Assembly (NCBI RefSeq): GCF_006345805.1
Contig: NC_043000.1
Coordinates: 33,294,001 to 33,358,000, forward strand
Direction: 5' to 3'
Length of the DNA stretch: 64,000 nucleotides
From: Octopus sinensis
Taxonomy: Eukaryota
In this document: in pieces, positions 6,282 to 32,155 of the stretch
Numbering within the stretch: the stretch's first letter is position 1
Layout: every line of letters begins with the position of its first letter
Made by a program: the position numbers and the translations under genes
The notes under the pieces: model-generated
What the model saw: only the letters and a program-made list of their open reading frames with translations
What the model was told of the DNA's origin: nothing
The model's database searches: none

Positions 6282-6284
6282 ATA

Positions 6285-6366
<82 letters not shown>

Positions 6367-6650: not shown

Positions 6651-6681
<31 letters not shown>

Positions 6682-7275: not shown

Positions 7276-7279
7276 TATA

Positions 7280-7312
<33 letters not shown>

Positions 7313-12200: not shown

Positions 12201-13289
12201 GTTCCACTGGCACGAGTGCCAATCAGGTGGTACTGTCATCGGCCACGTCAGCAATTTTGATTTTGATTTCACTTGCCTCAATAGGTCTTTGCAAGCGTAG
12301 TTTATTGACCAATGAATGAAGGGAACTCCTAGGTGGGCTGGTTATACACCACTGGCATAAGCCACGGCTTGTTGGGTCTTCTCAAGCACAGCATATCTCC
12401 AAAGGTCTCGGCCACTAGTCATTGCCTCAATGAGGTCCAATGTTCGAAGGTCAAGCTTCACCATCTCATCCCAGGTTTTCCTGGGTCTACCTCTTCCACA
12501 GGTTCCTTCATACATATTAAAATTGCAAATAATGAAAACAAATTAACTAGCTAAAGTCTTCGGCCAACTATTGAAAATTTCTACTAATCGCCAAATTATA
12601 AGTGGATGTTTCGCATTGCATCTTTTACAGACGAATGGCCCTGTTGGAGTCATTTCCATACCTAATCCTTATATTTTGTAGTAGGGGCTCTGAATGAGAG
12701 GGGAGGATGAAAGACGACCACCAAAAATGGCTATGCAAAAGTTTTCGGTCACCTCACATAAACCAATCAAGAGTGTTTTAAAACAGAAAAATATCTATAA
12801 CGAAAATTTATTACATAAGGTTCATTTCATGAAGTTTACTGTACGTTGTTAATATTTCGTATGGCTTCCCATAGCTTGAATAATTGCTGGCATGGATTGG
12901 ACGGTTTGACTGAAAACTGGTAAGCTGTATCAGGCTCCAATCTGATCTGGCAATGTTTCTACGGCTGGATGCCATTCCTAACGCCAACCACTCCAACAGT
13001 GTAATGGGTACCAGTTACGAAGCACCGGTATCGGCCACGACAAAGATCTCACTTAGATTAACAGGTCTTCTCAAGCACAGTATATTGCCAAAGGTCTCGA
13101 TCACTTGTCACTGCATCCATGGGGCTCAACGTTCGGGGCTTTTTACGTGTCACTGTGCCAGTTACGCGACACTGGCGTCGGTCACGGCTACTATTTCAAT
13201 TGACTCGACTGGTCTTCTCAAGCACGACACATATCGCCAAAGGTCTCGGCCACTAGTCATTGCCTCCTAAATCATGCCTCACCACCTCA

Positions 13290-15045: not shown

Positions 15046-16787
15046 AACCGATTTTTACTAAAGCAATAAATTTGTTACTTTTCTGTTTATCAGTTCAATG
15101 GCCAAATATTTGCTTCGTTTCAAGCAAGACTTTTTACTTTTGATGTTACATGAATAACCAACAAGTCCTCGAAATAGTCTGGATGTTACCAAGTCTCTAA
15201 TCACACAGCTATCTTCTTGGTTTACCTCTCTGGGTTTATACAGACTAACGAGTTCCACATTTATAGGCATACTACTTTGAAATCCAGAACCTCACACATC
15301 TTATCTATTTTCTCATCTTTTTTGCTGTCTAACATTTTTTTTCTTCTCACAAATTATCTTTCTCCCCACGGATCTGGTCAGTAGTTTACAGCTGGTCTCA
15401 TAGAAGTCCTCTGTTAATCAGGTGGTCAGCACAAAGTCCTTTTATTCATCGACCAATCCTGATTGTGGTAAAATACAGCATTGTATCTAACAAGTCGAAG
15501 TCTTATGTAGTTTGCCATGGACACAGGCGTGGCAATAGGTTTGCTTACCAACCACGATTCTGGGTTCAGTCCCACTGCATGGCACTTTGGGCAAGTGTCT
15601 TCTACAACAGCATCGGGCCAACCAAAGGTTTGTGTGTCTACTTGGAAGACAGTACTCGAAAACCTGTCGTATAGGAACACCACTGTCGTCTTTTTCCAAT
15701 ATTGAGAACATCCAGCCGAAGAAAATCTGCATCAATAAATTGTCTGATCCATGTAAGCATGGAAAAGTGAACCCACACACACACTACCTCAATCACTTCA
15801 GCCAGCATCATCTGCTCCCAACATGGACACACAATAAAGATTGGTTGGAGATAGATGACACCTCATTTAAAAATTGTTGGAGGCAATTATCTCAACTGTA
15901 TGACCCAACCCGATTTACAGTCAGCTGATATTGCTTGCTGGCTTCTCACCACTGCATACTTATTTCTTTATTACCCACAAGGGGCTAAACACAGAGGGGA
16001 CAAACATAGGTATTAAATCGATTACATCGACCCCAGTGCGTAGCTGGTACTTAATTTATCGACCCCGAAAGGATGAACGGCAAAGTCGACCTCGGCGGAA
16101 TTTGAACTCACAACGTAACGCAGACAAAATACCGCTATGCATTTCGCATGGCGCGCTAACGTGTCTGCCAGCTCGCCGCCTCTGCATACCAATCATATGA
16201 TTACTCTGCAAGTATTCTTTCATCAACATGGGTTAATTTCAAGAAATATAGCATACCTATTTTAACTTTTAGTAAATTTCTTGGTGAATACCAATTTCTT
16301 AGTATTACCTTAATAAAGTTGAATGAAATAGCCAGACCATCATCATCAACTTTCCATGCTGGCATTGGTAGGATGCCAATCTGATCTGGCAAAGTTTCTA
16401 TAGCTGGATGCCCTTTCTAATGCCAACCACTCCAAGAGTGTAGTGGATACTTTTACGTGCCACCTGCATGAGGGCCAGTCTGGCAGCACTGTTGTTGTTT
16501 TTCACATGCCAGTAAGGCAACGCTGAGTTTTAAAAAAACAAAACAAAAAAAACACATTAACTTTATATTATGGAAGTTCACAAACACACACTATGTACAT
16601 GTAACATTCCTTTATTCATTTCCAGGCACAAAGCCTAGTATATGTACTCATTCTGTACCTTAACTTGGTGTTTTTCTTTTCTCTCTTCTGACCAAAGGAA
16701 TCAATCAACCAACATTCATTCTATAGACAGAAATCTTTACTATAAGCAAGTAATAAAGAACAAAGAATCGTCGAGATTTTCCAGTGT

Positions 16788-16793
16788 TTTATT
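16788..16793 (-). terminator. Polyadenylation signal AATAAA of RPL29
   Basis: AATAAA on the minus strand about 28 nt after the stop codon; short 3'UTRs are typical of ribosomal protein mRNAs. Confidence 0.65.
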
Positions 16794-16820
16794 TCCTACA
16801 ACACCTCAAAACATTCCTTC

Positions 16821-17000
16821 CTAAGAAGTAGTAGTAGTAGAAGTGGCCTTTACTGCAGTTTTGGCTTCAGCTTTGGCAGCAGCTCGTTTGGCCATTTTAA
16901 TTCTGTGTCTCTCCTCACGCATCTCTCTCCTCTCTTCTTTTGGAATTAATCTGTTGTGTTTTCGAGCAAACCGAAGATTTCTCAGATACTTCCTGTCAAC
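16821..17000 (-). CDS. RPL29: 60S ribosomal protein L29 (eL29), last coding exon
   Basis: Translates VDRKYLRNLRFARKHNRLIPKEERR...TTTTS*, matching the eL29 motif VDPKFLRNMRFAKKHN. Acceptor tttgcag at 17001-17007, stop TAG at 16821-16823. Confidence 0.95.
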   Translation of the reverse strand, partial: VDRKYLRNLRFARKHNRLIPKEERREMREERHRIKMAKRAAAKAEAKTAVKATSTTTTS

Positions 17001-17760
17001 CTGCAAACGATACAATTACACTTTTAACAATCAAAACAACACATTTCATAAACTGCACCCAAACTGACAAGTCCCACTCAACCAACACACATTTCATCAC
17101 AGTAAAATATCGGCATTATTCCTTAAAAAGATAACCACTTACTCCTAATAAATAAATGGATAAAACAATGCATAACAGTTGCAGGAGAATTCAATAGACA
17201 AGTGCCATCCCAAATATGTGGAAAGTTCCATGGAGCAATCATCCACCCATTCTAAACAGGTTCCACAAGATTTACTATTGTATTCTTCCTTCTGAGATAC
17301 AGTCTAGAATGAAGACTTAATAAATTATGTAAATATTTTTAAAGACTGCAAAATCTTGAGACTTTCACAGCTACTTCTTATTGGTGAATCATGAGGTTGT
17401 GAGTTCAATTCCTGTCTGTGTGTTGTGTCCTTCAACAAGACAATTTATTTCACTTTATTGCTCCAGTCCACTCAGCTGGCATAAATGAGTTGTACCAGTA
17501 ATTCAAAGAGGGCCAGTCTTGTCCCATTCTGTGTCATGCTGGGTCTACCTAAGAACTATATCATGGGTTATGCATGTCTGTGGAGTGCTCAGCCAGTTGC
17601 ACATCCATTCCTCAAGCGAGTTACTCTGTTGATCAGATCAACCAGATCACATACAGGTGGCACAACCAAAGGAATACCAGTTGTAATCTTTCCTTATTCA
17701 TTCAGAAACGCTATCAAAAAAAAAAAAAAAATTTTTTAATGACAACATAAGTTTACTTAC

Positions 17761-17825
17761 ACCTTTCATTGAAGGACATCTGAATCTTTTCGGTCTATAA
17801 ATACCATTACGGTGAGCTTTGCTGT
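17761..17825 (-). CDS. RPL29: RPL29 middle coding exon (65 nt)
   Basis: Encodes (N)SKAHRNGIYRPKRFRCPSMKG. Acceptor ctttcag and donor GGT|gtaagt. Phases join both neighbouring exons in frame. Confidence 0.95.
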
Positions 17826-17906
17826 CTGAAAGAATGTAATGTGGACATAGAATAAATAATAATAATAACAACAGAAGTCCAGTTGCTAATGTAAATACTT
17901 CACAAG

Positions 17907-18045
17907 ACATGTCCCTGGGGTTAAACGGCACACCACAGTCAATGTATGACTGAAATGCTTCCTATCCAGGATTTGATGTCATCTCCGATAAATGTTACTG
18001 GCAGAGATGTAGTCATTAGAGAGGCTACCCTCCGTGGCTGGAGAT
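17907..18045 (-). ncRNA. SNORA65: H/ACA snoRNA SNORA65/U65/snR34-like, copy 1 (nearest the RPL29 3' splice site)
   Basis: Hairpin-hinge-hairpin-ACA layout: ATCTCC/GGAGAT and GTAGCC/GGCTAC stems, ANANNA box (AGATGA or ACATCA), CCTGG/CCAGG and CAGTCA/TGACTG stems, terminal ACA plus 3 nt. Pockets GCCAC+GCCAGT and GATAGGAA+GCCG are complementary to LSU rRNA ACUGGC-U-U-GUGGC and CGGC-U-C-UUCCUAUC. This copy has one upper-stem mismatch. Confidence 0.88.
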
Positions 18046-18380
18046 GTTGCAATAAAACAAATGAAAATAATAATGGTGTGTTAAATTCTGTAAGAAGGGC
18101 AGCAGTTTTGGAGGAGGTGAATCAATTACATTGACCCCAGTATTCAACTGGTACTTTCTAAAGATGAAATCTTGTAAACCAAATAACCATTCACTAATAC
18201 TGAATCAGACCAACATGCTAGAGATAACAGCCAAAACTCATTCAAATCATACTAAACTGAAGGATAGTGTATCTAGAACTACATTATCTTGTCTGAATTA
18301 TAAGAGATGACCATAGCTGCAATGGTTTTGGTTGTAAGTCTTAAGTTTAAACGAAGGATACTGAATTGAAAATCCAGGAA

Positions 18381-18517
18381 TCATCATCGTTTAACGTCCG
18401 TTCTCCATGCTAGCATGGGTTGGACGGTTCGACCGGGGATCTGGGAAGCCAGAAGGCTGCACCAGGCTCCAGTCTTATCTGGCAATGTTTCTACAGCTGG
18501 ATGCCCTTCCTAACGCC
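18381..18517 (-). mobile_element. RTE-tail short retroposon inserted in an array spacer
   Basis: GGCGTTAGGAAGGGCATCCAGC...CATGCTAGCATGG...TAAACGATGATGA tail. Family also at about 11890, 12880, 16340, 23895-24077, 26690, 28560, 36545, 38470, 41190, 48950, 52480 and 55770. Confidence 0.75.
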
Positions 18518-18734
18518 AATTATTTATAAAACAACCCAAGTATTGTAATATTTGTTTTAAAAAGTGGTGCATGTATAAATAGGGGGGAAAGGCAAACGGT
18601 TCTCTGGAATGTACGTACCCCTAACGCCCTGCTCAAATCTGTTGATCCCTAAAAAGGTTTTTTTAAAACTTATTAAGATCAAATCTCAATTTATTACACA
18701 AATTGAATAATAAAATTTAGCTGAAAGTCAACGC

Positions 18735-18873
18735 TAGTGTCCCTGGGGTTAAACGGCACACCACAGTCAATGTATGACTGAAATGCTTCCTATCCAGGAT
18801 TTGATGTCATCTCCTGTAAATGTTACTGGCAGAGATGTAGCCATTAGAGAGGCTACCCTCCGTGGCTGGAGAT
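18735..18873 (-). ncRNA. SNORA65: SNORA65-like H/ACA snoRNA, copy 2
   Basis: 139-nt near-identical unit; boxes and both pockets intact. Confidence 0.88.
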
Positions 18874-19482
18874 CTTTCAGTAAACTAGATGGGAATAGAC
18901 ATGGAACACAAGACAAAGAAGTTACTATTGGACATTTGACAAACAGAGGAATTTGTAATCTAATTGTGATCATCAAGTACCTCATTCTAATTAAAGATTT
19001 CAATATTTAAGTAGATAATAAACTAAGCAACATTTTTACTGAATAAGGCCAGTAGTTGTTCACTCACACTAAATTGATGTTGGTATCTAGAATTACTTTA
19101 ATCTGGTCTGGAATAAAGAAAATGGCCACAGCCACAAATAGTATTGAATTGGAAAACACTGGGAAACTCATAAATGCAATTATCTAAATGACTAATTATT
19201 TTAAGTTTTTGCTCTTCTTTTTATCTTCCTGAGCAGTTTTTAATATTTAATACACTACCTTGCTTCTGCTTAATTTGGAAAATAACTCATTAAGGCAATA
19301 TTTGAAACAAATTAACAAGGGTTTTTTTTAATGAAGACGTTAATTTATGTAAAAGTTTCTAACATAGAACCAGGTGTGATCTCAGACAGGTAGCTCAATT
19401 TGAAGGAACAGGACTGAAATCAAGTGATCTACTTCAATTTATTACACAAACTGGATTATAGGATTTAGCTGAAAGTCAGTGC

Positions 19483-19621
19483 TAGTGTCCCTGGGGTTAA
19501 ACGGCACACCACAGTCAATGTGTGACTGAAATGCTTCCTATCCAGGATTTAATGTCATCTCCGGTAAATGTTACTGGCAGAGATGTAGCCATTAGAGAGG
19601 CTACCCTCCGTGGCTGGAGAT
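19483..19621 (-). ncRNA. SNORA65: SNORA65-like H/ACA snoRNA, copy 3
   Basis: 139-nt unit; hinge variant ACATTA is still ANANNA. Confidence 0.88.
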
Positions 19622-20250
19622 CTTTCAGTAAATCAGATGAGAATAGACATGGAACACAAGACAAAGAAGTTACTATTGGACATTTGACAAACAAAGGAAT
19701 TTGTAATCTAATTGTGGTCATCAAGTACCTCATTCTAATTAAAGATTTCAATATTTAACTAAGCAACATTTTTACTGAATAAGGCTAGTAGTTGTTCATT
19801 CACACTAAATTGAAGGTGGTCTCTAGAATTACTTTAATCTGGTCTGGAATAAAAAAAAATGGTCACAGCCACAAATGCAACAAATAGTATTCAATTGAAA
19901 AACTGGGAAACTCATAAATACAATTATCTTAATGACTAACTATTCTAAGTTTTTGCTTTTCTTTTTATCTCCATGACCAGGTTTTAATACTTTTTTTTTA
20001 ACCATCTTTCAGAGGAAATACACTACCTTGCTTCTGCTTAATTTGGAAAATAACTCATTAAGGCAATATTTGAAACAAATTAACAAGGGTTTTTTTTAAT
20101 GAAGACGTTAATTTATGTAAAAGTTTCTAACATAGAACCAGGTGTGATCTCAGACAGGTAGCTCAATTTGAAGGAACAGGACTGAAATCAAGTGATCTAC
20201 TTCAATTTATTACACAAACTGGATTATAGGATTTAGCTGAAAGTCAGTGC

Positions 20251-20389
20251 TAGTGTCCCTGGGGTTAAACGGCACGCCACAGTCAATGTGTGACTGAAAT
20301 GCTTCCTATCCAGGATTTGATGTCATCTCCGGTAAATGTTTCTGGCAGAGGTGTAGCCATTAGAGGGGCTACCCTCCGTGGCTGGAGAT
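20251..20389 (-). ncRNA. SNORA65: SNORA65-like H/ACA snoRNA, copy 4
   Basis: 139-nt unit; one G-U to G-C stem change, a pocket variant GCCAGA and one stem mismatch. Confidence 0.85.
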
Positions 20390-21187
20390 AAAACATTTGA
20401 TAAAAACCTGAAATGCACAGAAAGTTGACAGCTACCTGTGTCCGGAACTAAAGAAGAGCTAAAAGAAAATCAGAATTTACAAATATAAATTTTTTAGTCT
20501 GGAAAAAAGTTTTCATTTTATGTCTGTTTTCCCATACTGGTATGGGTTAGGTGAGTACACATCAAGAATGCATTGTGTTACATTCAGATGTTTTTGCTTG
20601 GCACTAAGCTTTATCTGGTTCACCAAACAAAGGATCTTTCTTTCCACACACATTAAGTGTACAGCCTAAATGTTGTTTATTATGTTCATGATGATGATGA
20701 TGATGATGCATTTAAATCCAAGGTGGATGAAGCCAACAGACATGTTGCTACAAAATAGTATCAAGTTAGAAGCTACAATGCTTCACTGACTTTCATAGCA
20801 TTACATCTTCCAACACAGATCTGTCAATACGCATCCAATATTACTCTCTGGTTAAGCATCCAAGCTTCTATCTACAGCCAAGCTGGGATTATCAACTGAA
20901 ATAATTCTTTTATTTCTTTGATCCATTCCACTCATTTAGACAGTGGCCAAGCTCCACCATAAAGGTCTTAGACAATTATGTCAACCTCACAACATTGGTT
21001 TCTTTTATTATCCATCAAATTCCAATGTTAACCTCCAAAGTCTCTATACTAGAAGATAGCTGCCCTTAACATTGTCTAGTAAGAATGGACTTCATCAGCA
21101 TGGAACCATTTCTGCAGCAAGTCCTTTAACAGAAAACTAAATCACTTCAAATTTCGTGAGACATTAGCATCTGAAGATAAAATGATA

Positions 21188-21326
21188 AACTGTCCCTGGG
21201 GTTAAACGGCACACCACAGTCAATGTGTGACTGAAATGCTTCCTATCCAGGATTTGATGTCATCTCCGGTAAATGTTACTGGCAGAGACGTAGCCATAAG
21301 AGAGGCTACCCTCCGTGGCTGGAGAT
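21188..21326 (-). ncRNA. SNORA65: SNORA65-like H/ACA snoRNA, copy 5
   Basis: 139-nt unit; boxes and pockets intact. Confidence 0.88.
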
Positions 21327-22461
21327 GTTGCCATAATACAGACTTACTTCATACAATGTACAATGCTTGTTTGTTGTGTATCCATCTTAGACAAGTCAAA
21401 GACCTATGGAGTTGTTGCCCCCCCACCCCCACCCCACCCCAGACACACACACTTTGCTGTACACCAGAAACTGACACTTCACAAGCACATCAAGTTGAAT
21501 CACATCTGAACTGACAATGCTGGCTGCTGTACTTGAAGTTGATACGACAAAACCCAAAAACATTGAGCCCATTCCTGTTGCCCACCTCAATGACACTTGT
21601 CAGGTCACATTTGCCAGAATGATTGAGAAAATAACGTTTGGTGGTGTGGATGTCGCAGCACAAATTCTACAAGACTGCAAGAAAAGATTTTAGCATTAAT
21701 CCAGTTATGGGTTTTGCTCTTGAGGGATCAACCAGCTGCAGTCTTTATCAAGAAAGTTGCACTTGAGCAGGTCATGAGCAGACGAGCCAGTCGAATGAAG
21801 CCGAAAGCCAGTAGGGGAAGCTGCCAACCATTAGTCACATCATCATCAGTATCACCAACATGGATGTAAACACACATTTTGTGATGATTTAATGGTGAGG
21901 GTATCTGACTCCTGACTGTAAGGTCAGGAGTTCAATTCCCAACAGCCCTCTATATCCTTGAGCAAGACACTTCATTTCACATTGCTCCAGGCCACTCAGG
22001 TGGCAAAAATGAGTTGTACAAGTAGCTCAAAGGGCCAGCCTTTTCATACTCTGTGTCATGCTGAATCTCCGTTAAGGGTACTTGTGTCTGTGGAGTGGTC
22101 AGTCACAAGCAGGCTGTACAGTTGATCAAATCAACTGGAACATTCGTCATCACAACCGATGGAGTGCCACTGATGTGTGTGTGTGTGTGTGTAAATCAGA
22201 CAGCAGAGCCTGATACAATCTACTGACTTGCCAGGTTCTGTCAAACTGTCAGACCCAGTGATATCAATTTAGGAGACTAGTGCACATACATAATGGCAAA
22301 AGTACCATGCTGCGGGATTGAACCAGAAACCATGCAGTTGTGAAGGAAACCTAAATACCACACAGCCACAAGTGTACCTAAGGATAAATATACCTTGGAA
22401 TCTTCTGTAAAAAAAATTGTAATTGAATCAAACTGCTGTACTTATCACTGCTCGAACTAAA

Positions 22462-22599
22462 CTATGTCCCTGGGGTTAAACGGCACACCACAGTCAATGT
22501 ATGACTGAATGCTTCCTATCCAGGATTTGATGTCATCTCCGGTAAATGTTACTGGCAGAGATGTAGCCATTAGAGGGGCTACTCTCCGTGGCTGGAGAT
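22462..22599 (-). ncRNA. SNORA65: SNORA65-like H/ACA snoRNA, copy 6
   Basis: 138-nt unit with a 1-nt deletion in the 3' upper stem and a G-U to A-U change in the 5' stem. Confidence 0.87.
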
Positions 22600-23374
22600 G
22601 TTGCAATAAAAACGAATCAAAATAATAATGGTTTCAAATTTGTCCACAACGGCAACAATTTTGGAGGAGCAGATGAGTCAATTACATCAACCCCAGTAGT
22701 CAACTGGTACTTATTTTATCAACAACGAAAGGATGAAAGGTGAAGTCGACTTCGGTGGAATTTGAACTCAGAACAAATGAAAATACTGCTAAGCATTTCA
22801 TCCGGCACGCTAACAATTCTGCCAGTTAGCCACCTTAAAATTAATAATAATGATGATAATATGTAAAAGGAAGAAGTTGATAAAACTTAAATATTCTAAA
22901 GATGAAATCTTGTAAACCAAATAACCATTCACTAATACTGAATCAGACCAACATGCTAGAAATAACACCAAAACTCGTTCAAATCATACTTAACTGAAGG
23001 ATAGTGTATCTAGAACTACATTATCTTGTCTGAATTATGAGAGCTGCAATGGTTTTGGTTGTAAGTCTTAAGTTTAAACAAAGGATACTGAATTGAAAAA
23101 CTTGAGGAAACTCATAAATACAATTATTTAATGATTGATTATTGTTGAAAATACAGGAATCAATTATTTACAAAACAACCCAAGCATTGTAATATTTGCT
23201 TTAAAAAAAGTGGTGTAAACTAAGTATAAATAGAGGGAAAGGGGAAACAGTTCCCTGGAATAAAGCCCTGCTCAAATCTGTTGATCCCTAAAAAAGTCTT
23301 TTTAAAGCCTATTAAAATCAAATCTAGATTTATTGCACTAACTAAAATTATAGGATTTAGCTGAAAGTCAGCGT

Positions 23375-23513
23375 TAGTGTCCCTGGGGTTAAACGGCACA
23401 CCACAGTCAATGTGTGACTGAAATGCTTCCTATCCAGGATTTGATGTCATCTCCGGTAAATGTTACTGGCAGAGGTGTAGCCATTAGAGGGGCTACCCTC
23501 CGTGGCTGGAGAT
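23375..23513 (-). ncRNA. SNORA65: SNORA65-like H/ACA snoRNA, copy 7
   Basis: 139-nt unit; G-U to G-C stem change. Confidence 0.88.
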
Positions 23514-24405
23514 GCTGCAACAAAACAAGACAGCAGAATAGAAGTTACTATACAGGACACCTAACAAAGCTTCACTCTTAAGCATTCAGATTATTCAAGT
23601 CCAATGTAATGTCAATCTATTCGTATAGTTTGGAATTAACCATGCAATATCTCGTAGCTTTAAGATGTGAATATGATTGAGGATTTTAGAATGACATTGC
23701 AAGGTAGGTGTGAGAGGCCAGATATTACCGAACTCTCACTTCTACCCCGACAATGTTATTCTGAAACTGGCAGGCGGTTTTGGCCAGGTCAAATGCTAAA
23801 AGGATTAAACAGACAAAAATTGACATCTCTTTGCAAATCACATCCTTATCAAGACTGAAACAAGTTAACGTTAGTATAATAATAATAATTCTTTTGGCAC
23901 GTAAAAAGCACCCACTACACTCACGGAGTGGTTGGCGTTAGGAAGGGCATCCAGCTGTAGAAACACTGCCAGATAAGACTGGAGCCTGGTGCAGCCTTCT
24001 GGCTTCCCAGATCCCCGGTCGAACCGTCCAACCCATGCTAGCATGGAGAACGGACGTTAAACGATGATGATGATGATTAGCCACAAGGGCTAATCAGCAG
24101 CAGCCTACAAGAGTTGTAGAATTTCTTTTGATTCAATTCATAGAAGAACACATTAATGGCTAAAATCAAGAGAAAAGTTATTTCGGACCTAGACTATTAT
24201 TTGTAGATCTATGAAATTAGCAAGAGTTATGATAAACAGTTCAAAGTAACTGGATTGAAAAGCCAACAATACATTCCTATGAAGGACACCAGCACCTGAA
24301 ACACACATTAACAATACTTAACAGTCATTAGGAAAAGTGAATATTTTAAAATAATTTATTCACTACTTCTGAAATGATTCAAAGAAAAGTTAGAGAATCT
24401 ACAAG

Positions 24406-24544
24406 CTATGTCCCTGGGGTTAAACGGCACACCACAGTCAATGTATGACTGAAATGCTTCCTATCCAGGATTTGATGTCATCTCCTGTAAATGTTACTGG
24501 CAGAGATGTAGCCATTAGAGAGGCTACCCTCCGTGGCTGGAGAT
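24406..24544 (-). ncRNA. SNORA65: SNORA65-like H/ACA snoRNA, copy 8
   Basis: 139-nt unit; boxes and pockets intact. Confidence 0.88.
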
Positions 24545-25111
24545 CTTTCAGTAAATCAGATGGGAATAGACATGGAACACAAGACAAAGAAGTTACTATT
24601 GGACATTTGACAAACAGAGGAATTTGTAATCTAATTGTGATCATTCTAATTAAAGATTTCCATAAACTAAACATTTTTACTGATTAAGGCCAGTAGTTGT
24701 TCATTCACACTAAATTGAAGTTGGTATCTAAAATTACATTAATCTGGTCTGGAATAAAAAATGGTCACAGCCACAATGGAAAACACTGGGAAACTCATAA
24801 ATACAATTATCTTAATGACTAATTATTCTAAGTTTTTTTCTTCTTTTTATTTCCCTGACCAGTTTTTAATACTTTTTTTTTAACTATCTTTCAGAGGAAA
24901 TACACTACCTAACTCATTAAGGCAATATTTGAAACAAATTAACAAGGCTTTTTTTTTTATGAAGACGTTAATTTATGCAAAAGTTTCCAACATAGAACCA
25001 GGTGTGATCTCAGACAGGTAGCTTAATTCGAAAGGAACAGGACTGAAATCAAATCATCTACTTCAATTTATTACACAAACTGAATTATAAAATTTAGCTG
25101 AAAGTCAGCGC

Positions 25112-25250
25112 TAGTGTCCCTGGGGTTAAACGGCACACCACAGTCAATGTATGACTGAAATGCTTCCTATCCAGGATTTGATGTAATCTCCGGTAAATGT
25201 TACTGGCAGAGATGTAGCCATTAGAGAGGCTACCCTCCGTGGCTGGAGAT
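25112..25250 (-). ncRNA. SNORA65: SNORA65-like H/ACA snoRNA, copy 9
   Basis: 139-nt unit; hinge variant AGATTA is still ANANNA. Confidence 0.88.
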
Positions 25251-25568
25251 GTTGCAATAAAAATGAAAAAAAATAATAATGGTTTCAAATTCTGTAAGAA
25301 GGGCAGCAGTCTTGGAGGAGGTGAATCAATTACATCGACCCTAGTATTCAACTGGTACTTTCTAAAGATGAAATCTTGTAAACCAAATAACCACTCACTA
25401 ATACTGAATCAGACCAACATACTAGAAATAACAGCCAAAACTCAAGGATAGTGTATCTAGAACTACATAATCTTGTCTGAATTATAAGAGATGACCATAG
25501 CTGCAATGGTTTTGGTTGTAAGTCTTAATTTTAAACAAAGGATACTGAATTGAAAATTCAGGAATTAA

Positions 25569-25956
25569 TCTCTCTCTATATAAACGGCAGTTTGTCTGTG
25601 CGTGCCTCTGTGTGTCTGTTTGCTTGTACCCTCACTCCGACCACGGCTTTCAACCGATTCTGATGAAACTTGACACACACATAGCCCAATGTCATAATTC
25701 AAAACTAACGCAGCGAAAGTTTTGAAAAGTTCCCCCAGTTCTGAAAAAAAATCGATAAATTCGACATGGGGTCGAGAATCAGAAACCCAAACCACAGACC
25801 GTCTAGGGGACGCAACTCCACCTTTTTTAACTCTCAAAAAAAAAAATTACCATCATTTTTTCCCCATTTTTTTGCTATTTTTTGGCTATAACTCTCTAAA
25901 AATGCTTTATAGTTATTTCCCTTACAAACCTGAGCAACGCCGGGCGATACTGCTAG
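25569..25956 (+). mobile_element. Non-autonomous Helitron inserted in an array spacer
   Basis: A|TC...hairpin...CTAG|T. Paralogous spacers (27820-27840, 29690-29710) show the empty site GGAATCAA|TTATTTATA with no TSD. Confidence 0.85.
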
Positions 25957-26142
25957 TTATTTATAAAACAACCCAAGTATTGTAATATTTGCTTTAAAAA
26001 GTGGTGTGTGTATAAATAGGGGGAAAAGGGAAACAGTTCACTGGAATATTGCTACTAAAGGTTTTTTTAAAGCCTTATTAAAATCAAATCTCAAAATTTA
26101 CTGCACTAATTAAAATTATAGGATTTAGCTGAAAGTCAGCAC

Positions 26143-26282
26143 TAGTGTCCCTGGGGGTTAAACGGCACACCACAGTCAATGTGTGACTGAAATGCTTCCT
26201 ATCCAGGATTTGATGTCATCTCCGACATATGTTACTGGCAGAGATGTAGCCATTAGAGGGGCTACCCTCCGTAGCTGGAGAT
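26143..26282 (-). ncRNA. SNORA65: SNORA65-like H/ACA snoRNA, copy 10
   Basis: 140-nt unit; pocket GCTAC (U-G wobble with the target) and one extra C before the 3' stem. Confidence 0.85.
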
Positions 26283-27356
26283 GTTGCAATAAAATAGACG
26301 GGAATAGACATGGGATGGACAAGTGCAAGTTACTATAAGAGATTTGACCAACTTTAACCCATTAGCATTTAATCCAGCCAAATTATTCTCTGTTTTAAGT
26401 TCAACCTGGCCAGATCCTACGTCTCCCACCTACCCTACAATGCTATTTTGAGAGTATACAATCACATCACCGAAATATCAATGCTACAAGGTATGATCAG
26501 TGGAAAATAAGATGAATAAATAAGCATTACATTTGACAGAGTAATTCGAGATGCTAAAGGATTAAACACAAGCATTTGACATCTCTACGCAGCCCAGCTA
26601 ACGTACCCCATTCTAAGTAAAAATTAATTTAAAATGTGAATTTTATAAATGTAATTACACAATGGTCATTGCTGTTAATATAAACATCTATCGATGCCAG
26701 TACCGCCTGACTGGTCCTCATGCCAATGGCACGTAAAAAGTACCCACTGCACTTTTAGGATGGTTGGTGTTAGGAAGGGCATCCAGCTGTAGAAACACTG
26801 CCAGATCAGATTGGAGCCTGGTGCAGCCTTCTGGCTTGCCAGCCCTCGGTCAAGCCATCCAACCATTGCCAACACGGAAAGCGGATGTTAAATGACGATG
26901 ACCTACATCAATTTGTTGTTTAACTAAATATTGTAATCCCGTGAAAAGCAACCAAACCTCACTACCCTCCACCTGCCAACCCACACTAGATATTACATAC
27001 AACCAGGCTCAAATGAAGCTGTTGACACACAAGACCACAACACATCCTAAAAGGACAAAATGAATGAGATCTGTGATCATGCAAGGAGTCTATCTTTGAG
27101 GGATTTCATCAATAATACTGCTTTGAGGACTTATTTTACTGATCTATTTATTTAACTGCAAAAATTATGAGTTACCAAGGATACCAGAGTTAAAACACAC
27201 ACAGATGAACCTCCACAACAGTTGCATTTCCACTTACAAGCCATTCGTCAACACAAGTCTATACAAGAGTTACCTCATCTAAAAACTATCTCGAAGGAAT
27301 AGACTTCTTCAGCACGGAACCATTTCCATGAAACAATCTCCAAAGACAAAATGATA

Positions 27357-27495
27357 AACTGTCCCTGGGGTTAAACGGCACACCACAGTCAATGTATGAC
27401 TGAAATGCTTCCTATCCAGGATTTGATGTAATCTCCGATAAATGTTACTGGCAGAGATGTAGCCATTGGAGAGGCTACCCTCCGTGGCTGGAGAT
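27357..27495 (-). ncRNA. SNORA65: SNORA65-like H/ACA snoRNA, copy 11
   Basis: 139-nt unit; loop and hinge variants. Confidence 0.88.
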
Positions 27496-28013
27496 GTTGC
27501 AATAAAAATGAATCAAAATAATAATGGTTTCAAATTCTGTAAGAAGGGCAGCAGACTTGGAGGAGGTGAATCAATTATATCAACCCCAGTACTCAACTGG
27601 TACTTTTCAAAGATGAAATCTTGTAAACCAAATAACCATTCACTGAATCAGACCAACATGCTAGAAATAAAAGCCAAAACTCATTCAAATCATACTAAAC
27701 TGAAGGATAGCATATCTAGAACTACATTATCTTGTCTGAATTATAAGAGATGACCATAGCAGCAATGGTTTTGGTTGTAAGTCTTAATTTTAAACAAAGG
27801 ATACTGAATTGAAAATACAGGAATCAATTATTTATAAAACAACCCAAGTATTGTAATATTTGCTTTAAAAAGTGGTGTGTGTATAAATAGGGGGAAAAGG
27901 GAAACAGTTCACTGGAATATTGCTACTAAAGGTTTTTTTAAAGCCTTATTAAAATCAAATCTCAAAATTTACTGCACTAATTAAAATTATAGGATTTAGC
28001 TGAAAGTCAGCAC

Positions 28014-28153
28014 TAGTGTCCCTGGGGGTTAAACGGCACACCACAGTCAATGTGTGACTGAAATGCTTCCTATCCAGGATTTGATGTCATCTCCGACATA
28101 TGTTACTGGCAGAGATGTAGCCATTAGAGGGGCTACCCTCCGTAGCTGGAGAT
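28014..28153 (-). ncRNA. SNORA65: SNORA65-like H/ACA snoRNA, copy 12 (duplicate of copy 10)
   Basis: Same variants as copy 10; lies within the 1.87 kb duplication. Confidence 0.85.
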
Positions 28154-29226
28154 GTTGCAATAAATTAGACGGGAATAGACATGGGATGGACAAGTGCAAG
28201 TTACTATAAGAGATTTGACCAACTTTAACCCATTAGCATTTAATCCAGCCAAATTATTCTCTGTTTTAAGTTCAACCTGGCCAGATCCTACGTCTCCCAC
28301 CTACCCTACAATGCTATTTTGAGAGTATACAATCACATCACCGAAATATCAATGCTACAAGGTATGATCAGTGGAAAATAAGATGAATAAATAAGCATTA
28401 CATTTGACAGAGTAATTCGAGATGCTAAAGGATTAACACAAGCATTTGACATCTCTACGCAGCCCAGCTAACGTACCCCATTCTAAGTAAAAATTAATTT
28501 AAAATGTGAATTTTATAAATGTAATTACACAATGGTCATTGCTGTTAATATAAACATCTATCGATGCCAGTACCGCCTGACTGGTCCTCATGCCAATGGC
28601 ACGTAAAAAGTACCCACTGCACTTTTAGGATGGTTGGTGTTAGGAAGGGCATCCAGCTGTAGAAACACTGCCAGATCAGATTGGAGCCTGGTGCAGCCTT
28701 CTGGCTTGCCAGCCCTCGGTCAAGCCATCCAACCATTGCCAACACGGAAAGCGGATGTTAAATGACGATGACCTACATCAATTTGTTGTTTAACTAAATA
28801 TTGTAATCCCGTGAAAAGCAACCAAACCTCACTACCCTCCACCTGCCAACCCACACTAGATATTACATACAACCAGGCTCAAATGAAGCTGTTGACACAC
28901 AAGACCACAACACATCCTAAAAGGACAAAATGAATGAGATCTGTGATCATGCAAGGAGTCTATCTTTGAGGGATTTCATCAATAATACTGCTTTGAGGAC
29001 TTATTTTACTGATCTATTTATTTAACTGCAAAAATTATGAGTTACCAAGGATACCAGAGTTAAAACACACACAGATGAACCTCCACAACAGTTGCATTTC
29101 CACTTACAAGCCATTCGTCAACACAAGTCTATACAAGAGTTACCTCATCTAAAAACTATCTCGAAGGAATAGACTTCTTCAGCACGGAACCATTTCCATG
29201 AAACAATCTCCAAAGACAAAATGATA

Positions 29227-29365
29227 AACTGTCCCTGGGGTTAAACGGCACACCACAGTCAATGTATGACTGAAATGCTTCCTATCCAGGATTTGATGTA
29301 ATCTCCGATAAATGTTACTGGCAGAGATGTAGCCATTGGAGAGGCTACCCTCCGTGGCTGGAGAT
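29227..29365 (-). ncRNA. SNORA65: SNORA65-like H/ACA snoRNA, copy 13 (duplicate of copy 11)
   Basis: Same variants as copy 11; lies within the 1.87 kb duplication. Confidence 0.87.
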
Positions 29366-29913
29366 GTCGCAATAAAAATGAATCAAAATAATAATGGTTT
29401 CAAATTCTGTAAGAAGGGCAGCAGACTTGGAGGAGGTGAATCATTATATCAACCCCAGTACTCAACTGGTACTTTTCAAAGATGAAATCTTGTAAACCAA
29501 ATAACCATTCACTGAATCAGACCAACATGCTAGAAATAAAAGCCAAAACTCATTCAAATCATACTAAACTGAAGGATAGCATATCTAGAACTACATTATC
29601 TTGTCTGAATTATAAGAGATGACCATAGCAGCAATGGTTTTGGTTGTAAGTCTTAATTTTAAACGAAGGATACTGAATTGAAAATACAGGAATCAATTAT
29701 TTATAAAACAACCCAAGCATTGTAATATTTGCTTTAAAAAGTGGTGTAAACTAAGTATAAATAGAGGGAAAGGGGAAACAGTTCCCTGGAATGTACCCCT
29801 AAAGCCCTGCTCAAATCTGTTGATCCCTAAAAAAGTCTTTTTAAAGCCTATTAAAATCAAATCTAAATTTATTGCACTAACTAAAATTATAGGATTTAGC
29901 TGAAATTCATCGC

Positions 29914-30052
29914 TAGTGTCCCTGGGGTTAAACGGCACACCACAGTCAATGTATGACTGAAATGCTTCCTATCCAGGATTTGATGTCATCTCCGGTAAAT
30001 GTTACTGGCAGAGATGTAGCCATTAGAGAGGCTACCCTCCGTGGCTGGAGAT
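29914..30052 (-). ncRNA. SNORA65: SNORA65-like H/ACA snoRNA, copy 14
   Basis: 139-nt consensus-like unit about 580 nt downstream of the RPL29 donor at 30629. Confidence 0.88.
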
Positions 30053-30629
30053 AGGCAAAAGTGGGAAATTTAGAGCAAACCAAATGTTTAAACAACTAAA
30101 GATGAAGGTATGGTTGAGAAACTTGTACCCAAACTGTATATCCATGTGGGTTTGGGACCTTGTCCCTCAGCATGGCACTTGGGCAAGCATCTGCTACCAA
30201 AGTCTTGTGAGAGGATTTGGTGGATGGAAACTGAAAGAAGCCCATCTGTGCATATGTGTGTATGTGTACCATAGTCTAGACATCACATGATGGTTGTAAA
30301 TGCTCATCATCATCACACAAGCTGTGTTTTTTGTTTCCAGAGTTCCGTGAAAAACATGCCTGAGCCATGAGGAATGTTACCATACTTGGGGAACTGGTGA
30401 GAATTGGTGACCAGAAGGGCAACTGGCTGCACAAAATCTGCTCCAAGAAATTCTATCTGACCCCTATTTGCGTGGGTCAGACGAAATGAACTCATCCAGA
30501 CCCAACATTGGGGGAGACAGACACAGAGAAAATACATCCAAGTCAAATTCTAAACAACAGTAGAAAAAATAAAACAACGATTAACATAGAAAGAAAATAG
30601 TAAAAAGAAATAAATAAAACGAAACTCAC

Positions 30630-30666
30630 TTTGATTATGATTTGTATGATTCTTTGACTTGGCCAT
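30630..30666 (-). CDS. RPL29: RPL29 first coding exon (37 coding nt; exon spans 30683-30630)
   Basis: ATGGCCAAGTCAAAGAATCATACAAATCATAATCAAA = MAKSKNHTNHNQ, the canonical eL29 N-terminus. Donor gtgagt at 30629, acceptor tttccag at 30684-30690. Confidence 0.95.
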
Positions 30667-31163
30667 GTTGTGGAACTAGAAGTCTGGAAATAAAAAGATA
30701 TGAAAACAGCCTGAATAAACACCATAAATACATAGTTTATTAAACATATATTTCGAATATGTGTGAGCCATAGGGCAAACGATAGAACCCTGCTGCTGCT
30801 AGCTAGCTAAGTTCCCTCCTTTATACACAAAGTTAAATACACTTTTTGGCTCGGTTGAGGAAACTGAAAACAAGCACCAGTAGAGGTTCAAGTAGTCACA
30901 ATAAATATAGATTTGGATTACTACTAATCCAAATCTGGGGAGAGAGGCAGGAGGGAACCAACTCCACTTCAACCTACACACGAAAAATCAGAAGCCCAAA
31001 AGAAAACCATTTCTAGTTATAACTAATTCATTAACTCTTCATTATCATCATCATTATTATTATTACTATTATTAATTTCAACAGGAGTTTATTTAAATAT
31101 TTCTCTTCAAATACTATCCAAGATAAAAATGGTTTTTTAAAATTGCTATCATTGTTATTTTAA

Positions 31164-31989: not shown

Positions 31990-32155
31990 ATGGCACGAGA
32001 TGATCCACTCACACACATTCAGCCGGACACGAAAGACATTGAGAAACAGAATCTGTCCAGTGCTACCAGTTCCTTGCTTCCCAGTGAAACAGAATTGGTT
32101 CTTACTTATATCTCAGTTACTCTTATAGGAATTATCATCATTGCAGGCACCACAG
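31990..32155 (+). CDS. Class A GPCR (melatonin-receptor/moody/Tre1-like), exon 1
   Basis: MARDDPLTHIQ...NLSS...LVLTYISVTLIGIIIIAGTT: N-terminus with an N-glycosylation sequon plus TM1. Donor ACAG|gtaag, phase 1. The start codon is inferred. Confidence 0.8.

What the first reader, a model, noticed from the sequence alone, without database searches (positions are those of the whole stretch)
17907..30052. 14 tandem copies of a SNORA65/snR34-type H/ACA snoRNA inside one RPL29 intron
Seen in sequence: 14 units of 138-140 nt, all on the RPL29 sense strand, spaced about 0.65-1.27 kb apart within the intron 30629-17826. Each folds into hairpin-ANANNA-hairpin-ACA+3 nt. Established knowledge: the two pockets pair with conserved LSU rRNA ACUGGC[U]UGUGGC and CGGC[U]CUUCCUAUC. 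These are the peptidyl-transferase-centre uridines equivalent to E. coli 23S 2457 and 2511 (yeast 2826 and 2880), the dual targets of yeast snR34 and vertebrate U65. Metazoan intronic snoRNAs normally occur one per intron. Inference: this is a large dosage amplification of a single PTC pseudouridylation guide. Caveat: pocket-to-box distances of 17-18 nt are slightly above the canonical 14-16.
Basis: partly seen in the sequence, partly recalled or inferred. Interest (0 to 1): 0.92.

Follow-up and report, generated by a model that had tools for sequence, protein, structure and literature searches.

The report
Tandem PTC pseudouridine-guide snoRNAs in octopus RPL29
One intron of the octopus ribosomal-protein gene RPL29 carries 14 near-identical copies of a small guide RNA predicted to direct two pseudouridines in the ribosome's catalytic centre; other octopods share the array, an unusually large case of a gene layout already known in flies and rice.

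Summary
The window is Octopus sinensis. Fourteen units of 138-140 nt lie at exactly the stated coordinates, all on the RPL29 sense strand, inside intron 30629-17826.

Each unit folds as hairpin, ACAUCA hinge, hairpin, ACA. Its two pockets pick out the LSU rRNA uridines equivalent to E. coli U2457 and U2511 (yeast 2826 and 2880). These are the snR34/SNORA65 sites, found as the unique best targets in eight eukaryotic rDNA contigs.

The array is not an assembly artefact. O. vulgaris has 15 copies, O. bimaculoides at least 9, and Argonauta hians 13 plus 2 decayed relics, all in the same intron. Between Octopus and Argonauta, only the snoRNA bodies and a dispersed SINE remain alignable. Substitutions avoid the guides, boxes and basal stems.

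Caveats:
- Rfam SNORA65 is the best-scoring family, but at about 20 bits against a gathering score of 70.
- Pocket-to-box distances are non-canonical: 17 nt for the 3' hairpin and 23 nt for the 5' hairpin (18 nt only with an H box buried in the stem).
- Expression, processing and the pseudouridines themselves are untested.
- Intronic H/ACA clusters are already known in Drosophila and rice.

Verdict: a real, previously unannotated array and a new variant of a known organisation. Interest is moderate.

The parts
17826..30629 (-). RPL29 intron after the ATG exon (12,804 nt; GT at 30629, AG at 17827-17826). It holds the whole array.
   Evidence: Sequence reading, tblastn of exons, and protein identity to O. 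sinensis RPL29.
30630..30666 (-). RPL29 ATG exon (MAKSKNHTNHNQ plus 1 nt).
17758..17825 (-). Next RPL29 coding exon (..NSKAHRNGIYRPKRFRCPSMKG).
16821..17000 (-). Last RPL29 coding exon, including the stop codon.
29914..30052 (-). Unit 14, the 5'-most in the transcript, 139 nt, identical to the consensus. It serves as the exemplar. Sub-features: basal stem 30052-30047 / 29993-29988; 5' pocket guide strands AGCCAC 30046-30041 and GCCAGU 30009-30004; unpaired spacer AACAUUUACC 30003-29994; H box ACAUCA 29986-29981; 3' pocket guide strands GAUAGGAA 29973-29966 and GCCG 29936-29933; ACA 29919-29917.
   Evidence: 172.2 bits
29227..29365 (-). Unit 13 (hinge GGAGAUUACAUCA). It lies in the second copy of the 1.87-kb block.
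28014..28153 (-). Unit 12 (140 nt). The 5' guide reads AGCUAC, which is G-U compatible. An extra C in the 3' basal region makes the distance 18 nt. It lies in the second copy of the 1.87-kb block.
27357..27495 (-). Unit 11, identical to unit 13.
26143..26282 (-). Unit 10, identical to unit 12.
25112..25250 (-). Unit 9.
24406..24544 (-). Unit 8.
23375..23513 (-). Unit 7.
22462..22599 (-). Unit 6 (138 nt), with a 1-nt deletion in the 3' upper stem.
21188..21326 (-). Unit 5.
20251..20389 (-). Unit 4. The 3' strand of the 5' pocket reads GCCAGA, so one terminal pair is lost.
19483..19621 (-). Unit 3 (H box ACAUUA).
18735..18873 (-). Unit 2.
17907..18045 (-). Unit 1, the 3'-most in the transcript. 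Its 3' end lies 81 nt upstream of the 3' splice site. This position is conserved in all four octopod species.
25957..29771 (-). A 1.87-kb two-unit block present twice (25957-27897 and 27828-29771, overlapping in register) at 99.3% identity. It is a recent tandem duplication specific to this assembly or species.
   Evidence: (D8, D9)

Best explanation
The 14 units are genuine box H/ACA snoRNA genes. They are the octopod functional counterpart of yeast snR34 and vertebrate SNORA65 (U65).

Proposed mechanism, all inferred:
- RNA polymerase II transcribes them as part of the RPL29 pre-mRNA.
- Each unit is bound by the dyskerin/NOP10/NHP2 core co-transcriptionally.
- After splicing, the spacers are removed. 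The inner copies need endonucleolytic cuts in the spacers as well as exonucleolytic trimming.
- One RPL29 transcript can therefore yield up to 14 copies of one about 139-nt guide.
- In the nucleolus, the 5' pocket (AGCCAC / GCCAGU) pairs with LSU rRNA ACUGGC-UU-GUGGC. The 3' pocket (GAUAGGAA / GCCG) pairs with CGGC-UC-UUCCUAUC.
- This presents the uridines equivalent to E. coli U2457 and U2511 (yeast 2826 and 2880) to dyskerin for pseudouridylation in the peptidyl-transferase centre.

Evolution, partly shown:
- The array grows and shrinks by tandem block duplication and decay (birth and death).
- The bodies are kept alike within a species by turnover and/or short-tract gene conversion.
- Purifying selection acts on guides, boxes and basal stems.

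Shown here: the copies, the fold, the predicted targets, the constraint pattern, and recurrence in four species. Inferred: expression, the processing route, actual pseudouridine formation, and any benefit from high copy number.
For: Copies and host.

Fold: the minimum-free-energy and consensus structures give hairpin-hinge-hairpin-tail. On 41 distinct copies from four species, 94% of cells are paired, against 41-52% when partners are slid. One compensatory pair (C-G to U-A) is seen.

Boxes: ACAUCA or ACAUUA in the hinge, and ACA at the edge of conservation, in all 14 units.

Targets: the rRNA segment carrying both sites occurs verbatim in more than 120 metagenome contigs, and one of them is LSU_rRNA_eukarya at 2672 bits. 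A bipartite H/ACA target scan of eight 10-14-kb rDNA contigs puts GGC[U]UGUGGC (6+5 bp) top for pocket 1 and CGGC[U]CUUCCUAUC (4+8 bp) top for pocket 2. The two sites are 54 nt apart. E. coli positions 2457 and 2511 were verified. snR34 guides Psi2826 (= E. coli 2457) and Psi2880 (PMC11121408). The GC content of the snR34 5' and 3' duplexes (67% and 43%, PMC5778458) fits the same pocket order.

Rfam: SNORA65 is the best of 4227 families and shares the guide strings GCCAC, UAGGAA and UGUGCCG. The 5' hairpin of C. elegans ceN39 shares GGAUAGGAA...GCCG.

Selection:
- Between the O. sinensis and Argonauta introns, 99.5% of snoRNA-body bases are alignable, against 6% of the rest. That 6% is a dispersed SINE.
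- Consensus differences between Octopus and Argonauta are 3 of 56 in guides, boxes and basal stems, against 23 of 84 elsewhere (Fisher p = 0.0008).
- Those three changes are a peripheral guide base, an N position of ANANNA, and U-G to C-G.
- Guide variants within copies are mostly G-U compatible.
- Argonauta has two decayed relics and one damaged copy, which shows that unconstrained copies rot.

Recurrence: 14, 15, at least 9, and 13 copies in four assemblies. The 3'-most copy lies about 80 nt from the 3' splice site in all four.

Dynamics: there are lineage-specific block duplications in O. sinensis and O. vulgaris. Identity is about 96% within a species and about 82% between Octopus and Argonauta.
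Against: - No Rfam family reaches its gathering score. SNORA65 scores 19.8-21.6 bits against 70.
- Covariation support is thin, with one compensatory pair, because the sequences are close.
- The distance from target uridine to box breaks the 14-16 nt rule (PMC6800473). It is 17 nt in the 3' hairpin (18 nt in units 10 and 12). In the 5' hairpin it is 23 nt to the hinge ACAUCA, or 18 nt only if the stem-embedded AGAUGA is the H box.
- An 18-nt distance is functional for human SNORA22 (PMC6984369), and the rule is 'neither absolutely essential nor sufficient' (PMC5733568). I found no precedent for 23 nt.
- The octopus 28S sequence itself was not available, so complementarity was tested on other eukaryotes' rDNA.
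- There are no RNA data. Standard exonucleolytic maturation would not separate the inner copies, and two snoRNAs in one intron can give sno-lncRNAs instead (PMC11028025).
- The Lymnaea RPL29 locus has no such snoRNA, so the host association is not ancient in molluscs.
Confidence: 0.8

Rival explanations
1. Only one or a few units are productively matured, most plausibly the 3'-most one about 80 nt from the 3' splice site. The rest are neutral passengers of a locally unstable tandem repeat, kept similar by gene conversion from the functional copy.
For: - The 3'-most copy has a conserved position in all four species.
- The canonical exonucleolytic pathway releases one snoRNA per intron (PMC11028025).
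- Copy number and block structure differ even between sibling species.
- Species-specific substitutions are shared by all copies, which implies conversion or turnover.
Against: - Every one of the 14 units keeps intact boxes, stems and guides, while the flanks are at the random baseline.
- Decayed relics in Argonauta show that unprotected copies degrade.
- A high copy number (13-15) is kept in lineages whose split has a fossil lower bound of about 29 Ma (PMC12682272).
- Gene conversion confined exactly to the 139-nt body, without selection, is an ad hoc assumption.
Confidence: 0.15
2. The main stable products are intron fragments capped at both ends by H/ACA snoRNPs (sno-lncRNA or SLERT-like molecules), or the array acts in cis on RPL29 splicing or expression. 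Free guide snoRNAs would then be a minor product.
For: Two snoRNAs in one intron generate sno-lncRNAs in mammals, and SLERT is H/ACA-ended (PMC11028025). The spacers of 0.5-1.1 kb lie between protected ends.
Against: Spacer sequence and length are not conserved between species or between units, so no conserved lncRNA body exists. Selection is visible on the rRNA guide nucleotides themselves, which only matters if the RNA acts as a guide.
Confidence: 0.1
3. The RNA is a single-site guide. Only the 3' pocket (17 nt from ACA) is active. The 5' pocket (23 nt from the hinge H box) is a non-functional remnant, and the first PTC site is served by another guide or left unmodified.
For: The 5' hairpin has a 7-11-nt unpaired spacer of variable sequence between the guide strand and the basal stem. 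The 14-16 nt rule comes from PMC6800473. No 23-nt precedent was found.
Against: Both strands of the 5' pocket (AGCCAC, GCCAGU) are invariant between the Octopus and Argonauta consensus, although overall divergence is 18%. The 11-bp match is the unique top hit in rDNA. A bulged spacer would leave a helical path of about 13 nt, though this is inference.
Confidence: 0.25
4. The array is an assembly artefact, or the units are copies of a dispersed snoRNA-derived retroposon or SINE.
For: [quoted passage not shown]
Against: - Four independent assemblies of four species have 9-15 copies in the same intron.
- All copies share one orientation.
- There are none elsewhere in the 64-kb window or in the 5-10 kb flanks of the other loci.
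- I saw no poly(A) tails flanking the units in the sequence read.
Confidence: 0.02

Closest known systems
Yeast snR34 and vertebrate SNORA65 (U65; Rfam RF00302, clan CL00042)
   Same: Both are two-hairpin H/ACA guides. The 5' pocket targets the LSU uridine equivalent to E. coli 2457 (yeast Psi2826), and the 3' pocket targets the uridine 54 nt downstream (yeast Psi2880). The guide strings GCCAC, UAGGAA and UGUGCCG are shared with the SNORA65 consensus (PMC11121408; PMC5778458).
   Different: - The covariance-model score is only about 20 bits against a gathering score of 70.
- The 3' pocket is 17 nt from ACA, against 15 nt in the SNORA65 consensus.
- The 5' hairpin carries an extra spacer of about 8-10 nt.
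- The octopod RNA is multi-copy in one intron.
- From memory and unchecked: snR34 is an independently transcribed yeast gene, and human SNORA65 sits in an RPL12 intron. Here the host is RPL29.
Intronic snoRNA gene clusters of Drosophila melanogaster (H/ACA; Huang et al. 2004 JMB, 2005 RNA) and rice (Liang et al. 2002)
   Same: Several snoRNA genes, often tandem isoforms, lie in the sense orientation within a single intron of a host gene (PMC2780460; titles as cited in PMC2246290).
   Different: Those papers could not be read here. From memory, fly clusters hold a handful of isoforms, often mixed guides. Here 13-15 copies of one guide sit in a ribosomal-protein gene, in a mollusc, and are conserved across two octopod superfamilies.
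Mammalian SNORD115 / SNORD116 / SNORD113-114 tandem arrays
   Same: Both are tens of near-identical snoRNA copies in a tandem array that evolves by birth and death and by conversion (PMC8789076, PMC12429941).
   Different: Those are box C/D orphans. Each copy sits in its own intron of a repeated non-coding host, and the loci are imprinted. Here the copies are a canonical H/ACA rRNA guide, all in one intron of a protein-coding housekeeping gene.
sno-lncRNAs / SLERT
   Same: The shared precondition is two or more snoRNAs within one excised intron (PMC11028025).
   Different: There is no evidence here for a stable inter-snoRNA RNA. The spacers are unconserved.
C. elegans ceN39 (RF01629), 5' hairpin
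   Same: It has the same pocket strings, GGAUAGGAA...GCCG, and hence the same predicted target CGGC-U-CUUCCUAUC.
   Different: The match is only 13.7 bits and covers a single hairpin, which sits in the 5' rather than the 3' half of the RNA.

Membership tests
Box H/ACA snoRNA (class) | Hairpin-hinge-hairpin-tail secondary structure | tested here: met
   The single-sequence and consensus folds give this structure. On 41 copies from four species, 94% of cells are paired against 41-52% for slid controls. The folding z-score is only -2.7, and there is one compensatory pair.
Box H/ACA snoRNA (class) | H box ANANNA in the single-stranded hinge | tested here: met
   All 14 units have ACAUCA (ACAUUA in unit 3) at unit nt 67-72. 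The box is conserved in the other three species, apart from Ah04.
Box H/ACA snoRNA (class) | ACA box 3 nt from the mature 3' end | tested here: inconclusive
   ACA is invariant, and sequence conservation stops directly after it. This fits the feature, but the mature 3' end was not measured.
Box H/ACA snoRNA (class) | An internal-loop pocket with bipartite complementarity to a substrate, flanking an unpaired U-N | tested here: met
   The 5' pocket forms 6+5 bp and the 3' pocket 4+8 bp. Each site is the unique top hit in 8 rDNA contigs. The test used non-octopus rDNA.
Box H/ACA snoRNA (class) | Target uridine 14-16 nt upstream of the H or ACA box | tested here: not met
   Counting on the sequence gives 17 nt for the 3' hairpin (18 nt in units 10 and 12). 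The 5' hairpin gives 23 nt to ACAUCA, or 18 nt to the stem-embedded AGAUGA. The rule is from PMC6800473, and a functional 18-nt exception is in PMC6984369.
Box H/ACA snoRNA (class) | A stable RNA bound by dyskerin, NOP10, NHP2 and GAR1 | not testable with these tools
   No RNA or protein data are available.
Rfam SNORA65 (RF00302) | Covariance-model score at or above the gathering threshold (70 bits) | tested here: not met
   The score is 19.8-21.6 bits. E is 3.5-9.4 on 14.5 kb and 0.1 on a single unit. It is still the best of 4227 families.
snR34 / SNORA65 functional family | One RNA guides both PTC uridines (yeast 2826 with the 5' pocket, 2880 with the 3' pocket) | tested here: met
   This is met by prediction only. 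Numbering is and PMC11121408. Pocket order agrees with the duplex GC contents in PMC5778458.
snR34 / SNORA65 functional family | Pseudouridine actually present at the two sites in the host 28S and dependent on this RNA | not testable with these tools
   This needs pseudouridine mapping and the octopus 28S sequence.
Intronic snoRNA gene cluster (rice / Drosophila type) | Two or more snoRNA genes in the sense orientation within one host-gene intron | tested here: met
   Fourteen units lie within intron 30629-17826. The same holds in three more species.
Intronic snoRNA gene cluster (rice / Drosophila type) | Units expressed from the host pre-mRNA rather than from their own promoters | tested here: inconclusive
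   No upstream element is conserved between Octopus and Argonauta units. This is consistent with host-dependent expression, but there are no transcription data.
SNORD115/116-type tandem array | Each snoRNA copy in its own intron, separated by repeated host exons | tested here: not met
   All copies lie between two consecutive RPL29 coding exons. The spacers hold only SINE and unique sequence.

The most novel reading that the evidence does not exclude
Octopods have kept a 13-15-copy, single-intron array of one PTC pseudouridylation guide since at least the Octopus-Argonauta split. The proposed reason is that they need, and can process, many snoRNAs from one intron.

This would imply one of two things. 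Either an endonucleolytic snoRNA-release pathway operates in an animal, as in plants and yeast polycistrons. Or the intron yields a ladder of H/ACA-capped intron RNAs.

It would also imply that high dosage compensates for a pocket geometry (17 and 23 nt) outside the accepted 14-16 nt ruler. If the 5' pocket works, it would extend the known limits of H/ACA guide architecture.
Probability: 0.2. Interest if true: 0.7.

Novelty: new variant of a known kind. Interest (0 to 1): 0.5.

Why it matters
Four points make this worth noting.

1. It identifies the octopod guide for two conserved pseudouridines of the peptidyl-transferase centre. Current Rfam-based annotation cannot see this gene family, which scores about 20 bits against a threshold of 70.

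2. It is an extreme, evolutionarily maintained exception to the one-snoRNA-per-intron rule of animals, and it sits in a highly expressed ribosomal-protein gene. That makes it a natural system for asking how several snoRNPs are released from one intron, and whether sno-lncRNA-like by-products form.

3. The conserved non-canonical pocket-to-box distances give a natural test of how strict the H/ACA '15 +/- 1 nt ruler' is.

4. The array shows birth and death together with concerted evolution, with selection confined to a 139-nt body. This is useful for models of multigene ncRNA families.

It does not change what H/ACA snoRNAs are understood to do.

Tried and rejected
- Rfam at gathering thresholds over the whole window gave nothing. 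Whole-window E-value hits were only (TG)n-driven miRNA noise.
- A weak SNORD74-like hit in the next intron (17066-17111) was rejected. That intron shares nothing with Argonauta, and O. bimaculoides has a 29-nt deletion through the site.
- Four extra blocks conserved between Octopus and Argonauta in the intron were suspected to be a second snoRNA. They are copies of a dispersed SINE, present in both orientations and outside the gene.
- I looked for the snoRNA in gastropod RPL29 loci. Babylonia P0010 is an intronless retrocopy. Lymnaea L004 has introns but no hit by blastn, by model R1 or by guide-motif regular expressions.
- I looked for squid or Nautilus RPL29 loci. No annotated decapodiform RPL29 appears among the 120 listed hits of 640. 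The cephalopod-like unnamed proteins P0018 and P0005 sit on chimeric RNA-seq contigs without introns.
I used P0001 instead.
- Huang 2005 (PMC1370813) and Xiao 2009 (PMC2612771) are not held.
- snR34 substrate sequences are not printed in PMC5778458 or PMC6800473. I therefore verified the rRNA segment in metagenome rDNA.
- Two literature searches for octopus or cephalopod snoRNA arrays found nothing relevant.

Full report
OBSERVATION

The window comes from Octopus sinensis chromosome CM016862.1 (GCA_006345805.1). The spliced RPL29 product read from the minus strand is 100% identical to XP_029635444.1, and the gene range matches. The ATG exon is 30666-30630. The intron runs from 30629 (GT) to 17826 (AG). 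The next exons are 17825-17758 and 17000-16821.

Inside that intron, the repeat finder reports a 14-member direct-repeat family. A covariance model built from the copies (R1) finds exactly 14 full-length minus-strand hits in the whole 64-kb window, none of them outside the intron.

The alignment of the 14 copies is invariant from AUCUCC to ACA and breaks down immediately outside. Bodies are 95.5% identical pairwise. The adjacent 139-nt flanks are 58% identical, against a shuffled baseline of 52%.

One qualification applies. Units 10/11 and 12/13 are a 1.87-kb block repeated at 99.3% identity, and that block is single in O. vulgaris. The robust count is therefore 12-14.

WHAT EACH UNIT IS

A unit folds into two hairpins separated by a hinge and followed by a short tail. 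On unit numbering the features are:
- basal stem AUCUCC/GGAGAU, nt 1-6 and 60-65
- pocket strands AGCCAC (7-12) and GCCAGU (44-49)
- upper hairpin, nt 13-43
- unpaired spacer AACAUUUACC, nt 50-59
- hinge with ACAUCA (ANANNA), nt 67-72
- second basal stem UCCUGG/CCAGGG
- pocket strands GAUAGGAA (80-87) and GCCG (117-120)
- upper hairpin, nt 88-116
- ACA at nt 134-136, plus 3 variable nt

On 41 distinct copies from four species, 94% of cells in this structure are standard pairs, against 41-52% when the partners are slid. Only one pair shows a compensatory change (C-G in Octopus, U-A in Argonauta). Covariation support is therefore thin.

TARGETS

I checked that the LSU rRNA segment recalled from knowledge is real. 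The 74-nt pattern carrying both proposed sites occurs verbatim in more than 120 metagenome contigs. One of these is eukaryotic LSU rRNA at 2672 bits.

I then ran a bipartite H/ACA target scan along eight rDNA contigs of 10-14 kb. At each position the target U and the next base were left unpaired, and contiguous Watson-Crick or G-U pairs were counted on both sides. In every contig, pocket 1 ranks GGC[U]UGUGGC first (6+5 bp) and pocket 2 ranks CGGC[U]CUUCCUAUC first (4+8 bp). The two sites are 54 nt apart.

On an annotated E. coli 23S gene, the homologous uridines are positions 2457 and 2511. Yeast snR34 guides Psi2826, stated to equal E. coli Psi2457, and also Psi2880 (PMC11121408). The GC contents reported for the snR34 5' and 3' guide-substrate duplexes (67% and 43%, PMC5778458) fit the same pocket order.

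The caveat is that the octopus 28S itself was not available.

RFAM

No family reaches its gathering score. With permissive thresholds, SNORA65 (RF00302) is the best family for 9 of the units, but at 19.8-21.6 bits against a gathering score of 70. E is 0.1 even for a single unit searched alone.

The alignment shows why there is any match at all. The guide strings GCCAC, UAGGAA and UGUGCCG are shared, while the stems and the 5' hairpin are not. The 5' hairpin of C. elegans ceN39 shares GGAUAGGAA...GCCG.

Membership of the Rfam family is thus not met. Functional equivalence, meaning the same two targets in the same pocket order, is supported.

GEOMETRY

The accepted distance from the target uridine to the H or ACA box is 14-16 nt (PMC6800473). 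Here the 3' hairpin has 17 nt (GCCGUUUAACCCCAGGG), or 18 nt in units 10 and 12. The SNORA65 consensus has 15 nt.

The 5' hairpin has 23 nt to the hinge ACAUCA.

The excess is the spacer after GCCAGU. Its length is 10 nt in O. sinensis and O. vulgaris, 10-11 nt in O. bimaculoides, and 9 nt in Argonauta (7 nt in one copy). Apart from AACA, its sequence varies. This fits a looped-out linker, which would leave a helical path of about 13 nt. That last point is inference.

An 18-nt distance is functional in human SNORA22 (PMC6984369). The ruler is 'neither absolutely essential nor sufficient' (PMC5733568). I found no precedent for 23 nt.

COMPARATIVE EVIDENCE

The RPL29 loci of three other octopods were fetched. 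All of the following copies are in the sense orientation, between the same two exons.

| Species | Assembly | Copies |
|---|---|---|
| O. sinensis | GCA_006345805.1 (window) | 14 |
| O. vulgaris | GCA_951406725.2 | 15 |
| O. bimaculoides | GCA_001194135.2, with 1,765 N in the locus | at least 9 |
| Argonauta hians | GCA_054771915.1 | 13, plus two decayed relics in which a (TA)n tract replaces the 5' hairpin |

This excludes an assembly artefact. It also dates the multi-copy state, or a shared tendency towards it, to at least the Octopus-Argonauta split. The fossil lower bound used for that split in PMC12682272 is about 29 Ma.

Three further observations bear on selection and dynamics.
- The 3'-most copy ends about 80 nt before the 3' splice site in all four species.
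- Between the O. sinensis and Argonauta introns, 99.5% of snoRNA-body bases are alignable, against 6% of the remainder. That remainder is a dispersed SINE found in both orientations and outside the gene.
- The Octopus and Argonauta consensus sequences differ at 26 of 140 positions. Only 3 of 56 positions differ in guides, boxes and basal stems, against 23 of 84 elsewhere (Fisher p = 0.0008). The three changes are benign: a peripheral guide base, an N of ANANNA, and U-G to C-G.

Copies are about 96% identical within a species but about 82% identical between Octopus and Argonauta. No trans-species pairs stand out. The array therefore evolves in concert, or turns over.

O. sinensis and O. vulgaris are colinear in the 3' two-thirds of the array. 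In the 5' part each has its own fresh block duplication: a 1.87-kb block repeated twice in O. sinensis, and a run of 642-bp units in O. vulgaris.

The Lymnaea RPL29 gene has introns but no such snoRNA. The host association is therefore not general in molluscs.

MECHANISM (INFERRED)

The units lack any upstream element conserved between species. They lie in the sense orientation in a highly expressed ribosomal-protein gene. They are therefore most likely made from the RPL29 pre-mRNA.

Exonucleolytic trimming of a debranched intron can free only what lies between protected ends, and two snoRNAs per intron give sno-lncRNAs in mammals (PMC11028025). Release of 14 individual snoRNAs would therefore need endonucleolytic cuts in the spacers. 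This is unproven.

The guide function follows from the pockets. Whether 14 copies are needed for dosage is open. Three possibilities remain: they compensate for inefficient release or for a sub-optimal pocket geometry, they serve some other dosage need, or they are simply tolerated. The persistence of 13-15 intact copies alongside decayed relics argues for selection on most copies.

COMPARISON WITH KNOWN SYSTEMS

[quoted passage not shown] For H/ACA snoRNAs specifically, the reference is Huang et al. [quoted passage not shown]

The mammalian SNORD115/116 arrays are tandem, but they are C/D orphans with one copy per intron of a non-coding host (PMC12429941, PMC8789076). Two literature searches found no description of snoRNA arrays in cephalopods. 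The giant-squid genome paper only counts Rfam-type snoRNA loci.

The finding is therefore a new, unusually large and phylogenetically maintained variant of a known organisation. It is also a new, Rfam-invisible member of the snR34/SNORA65 functional family.

VERDICT

Interest is 0.5.

Noticed in passing
window 18380-18519, 23924-24078, 26746-26892, 28616-28762: Copies of a dispersed SINE of about 140-155 nt (core GGCAGTGTTTCTACAGCTGGATGCCCTTCCTAAC) lie in both orientations between the snoRNA units. Related copies are scattered through the Argonauta locus, inside and outside RPL29. Apart from the snoRNA bodies, they are the only sequence in the intron alignable between Octopus and Argonauta.
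   Followed up: partly
L001 11789-11911 and 15451-15565 (Argonauta hians): These are two decayed relics of the snoRNA unit. The 5' hairpin is replaced by a (TA)n microsatellite, the 3' hairpin is recognisable, and the ACA and basal stem are lost. Copy Ah07 (L001 14026-14163) has GCCG changed to GCCA and a broken basal stem. Ah04 has a broken H box. Together these are evidence for birth and death within the array.
   Followed up: partly
window 17066-17111 (next RPL29 intron): There is a weak SNORD74-like Rfam hit here (19.3 bits against a gathering score of 41). It is not conserved: the intron shares nothing with Argonauta, and O. bimaculoides has a 29-nt deletion through the site. I treated it as noise.
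   Followed up: yes
window 1111-1240, 6072-6732, 7271-7474, 41812-41882: Simple-sequence tracts produce many sub-threshold hits to the mir-297, mir-466, mir-3149 and mir-1277 models (up to 55 bits against gathering scores of 81-100). They are likely microsatellite artefacts. I did not read the sequence.
   Followed up: no
L002 265-8677 (- strand; about window 31990-40400, + strand); also L001 537-7113 and L005 1-3943: A 7tm_1 GPCR gene (377-379 aa) lies upstream of RPL29 and is divergently oriented. This synteny is kept in O. sinensis, O. bimaculoides and Argonauta.
   Followed up: no
L006 5001-32768 (O. vulgaris): The deposited O. vulgaris annotation calls a 220-aa 'ribosomal L29' product spanning 27.8 kb. 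The real RPL29 exons lie at 12734-26013. This is probably a gene-model fusion.
   Followed up: no
window 16090-16210 and 16380-16460 (minus strand, downstream of RPL29): There is a tRNA-like, SINE-looking element (..GGCGAGCTGGCAGACACGTTAGCGCG..GAGTTCAAATTCCGCCGAGGTCGAC..) and another copy of the CATCCAGCTATAGAAAC SINE core. I did not analyse them.
   Followed up: no
L006 15889-17955 (O. vulgaris): This is a run of near-identical 642-bp units, each with one snoRNA. O. sinensis has no counterpart run: its single spacer 03 matches three successive O. vulgaris spacers about equally. It is a lineage-specific expansion mirroring the 1.87-kb block duplication in O. sinensis.
   Followed up: partly
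window 30690-30700 (minus strand, just upstream of the ATG): The sequence tttccag|ACTTCTAGTTCCACAACATGG looks like a 3' splice acceptor. RPL29 probably has an upstream non-coding exon, in which case the array intron would be intron 2 rather than intron 1. I did not verify this.
   Followed up: no
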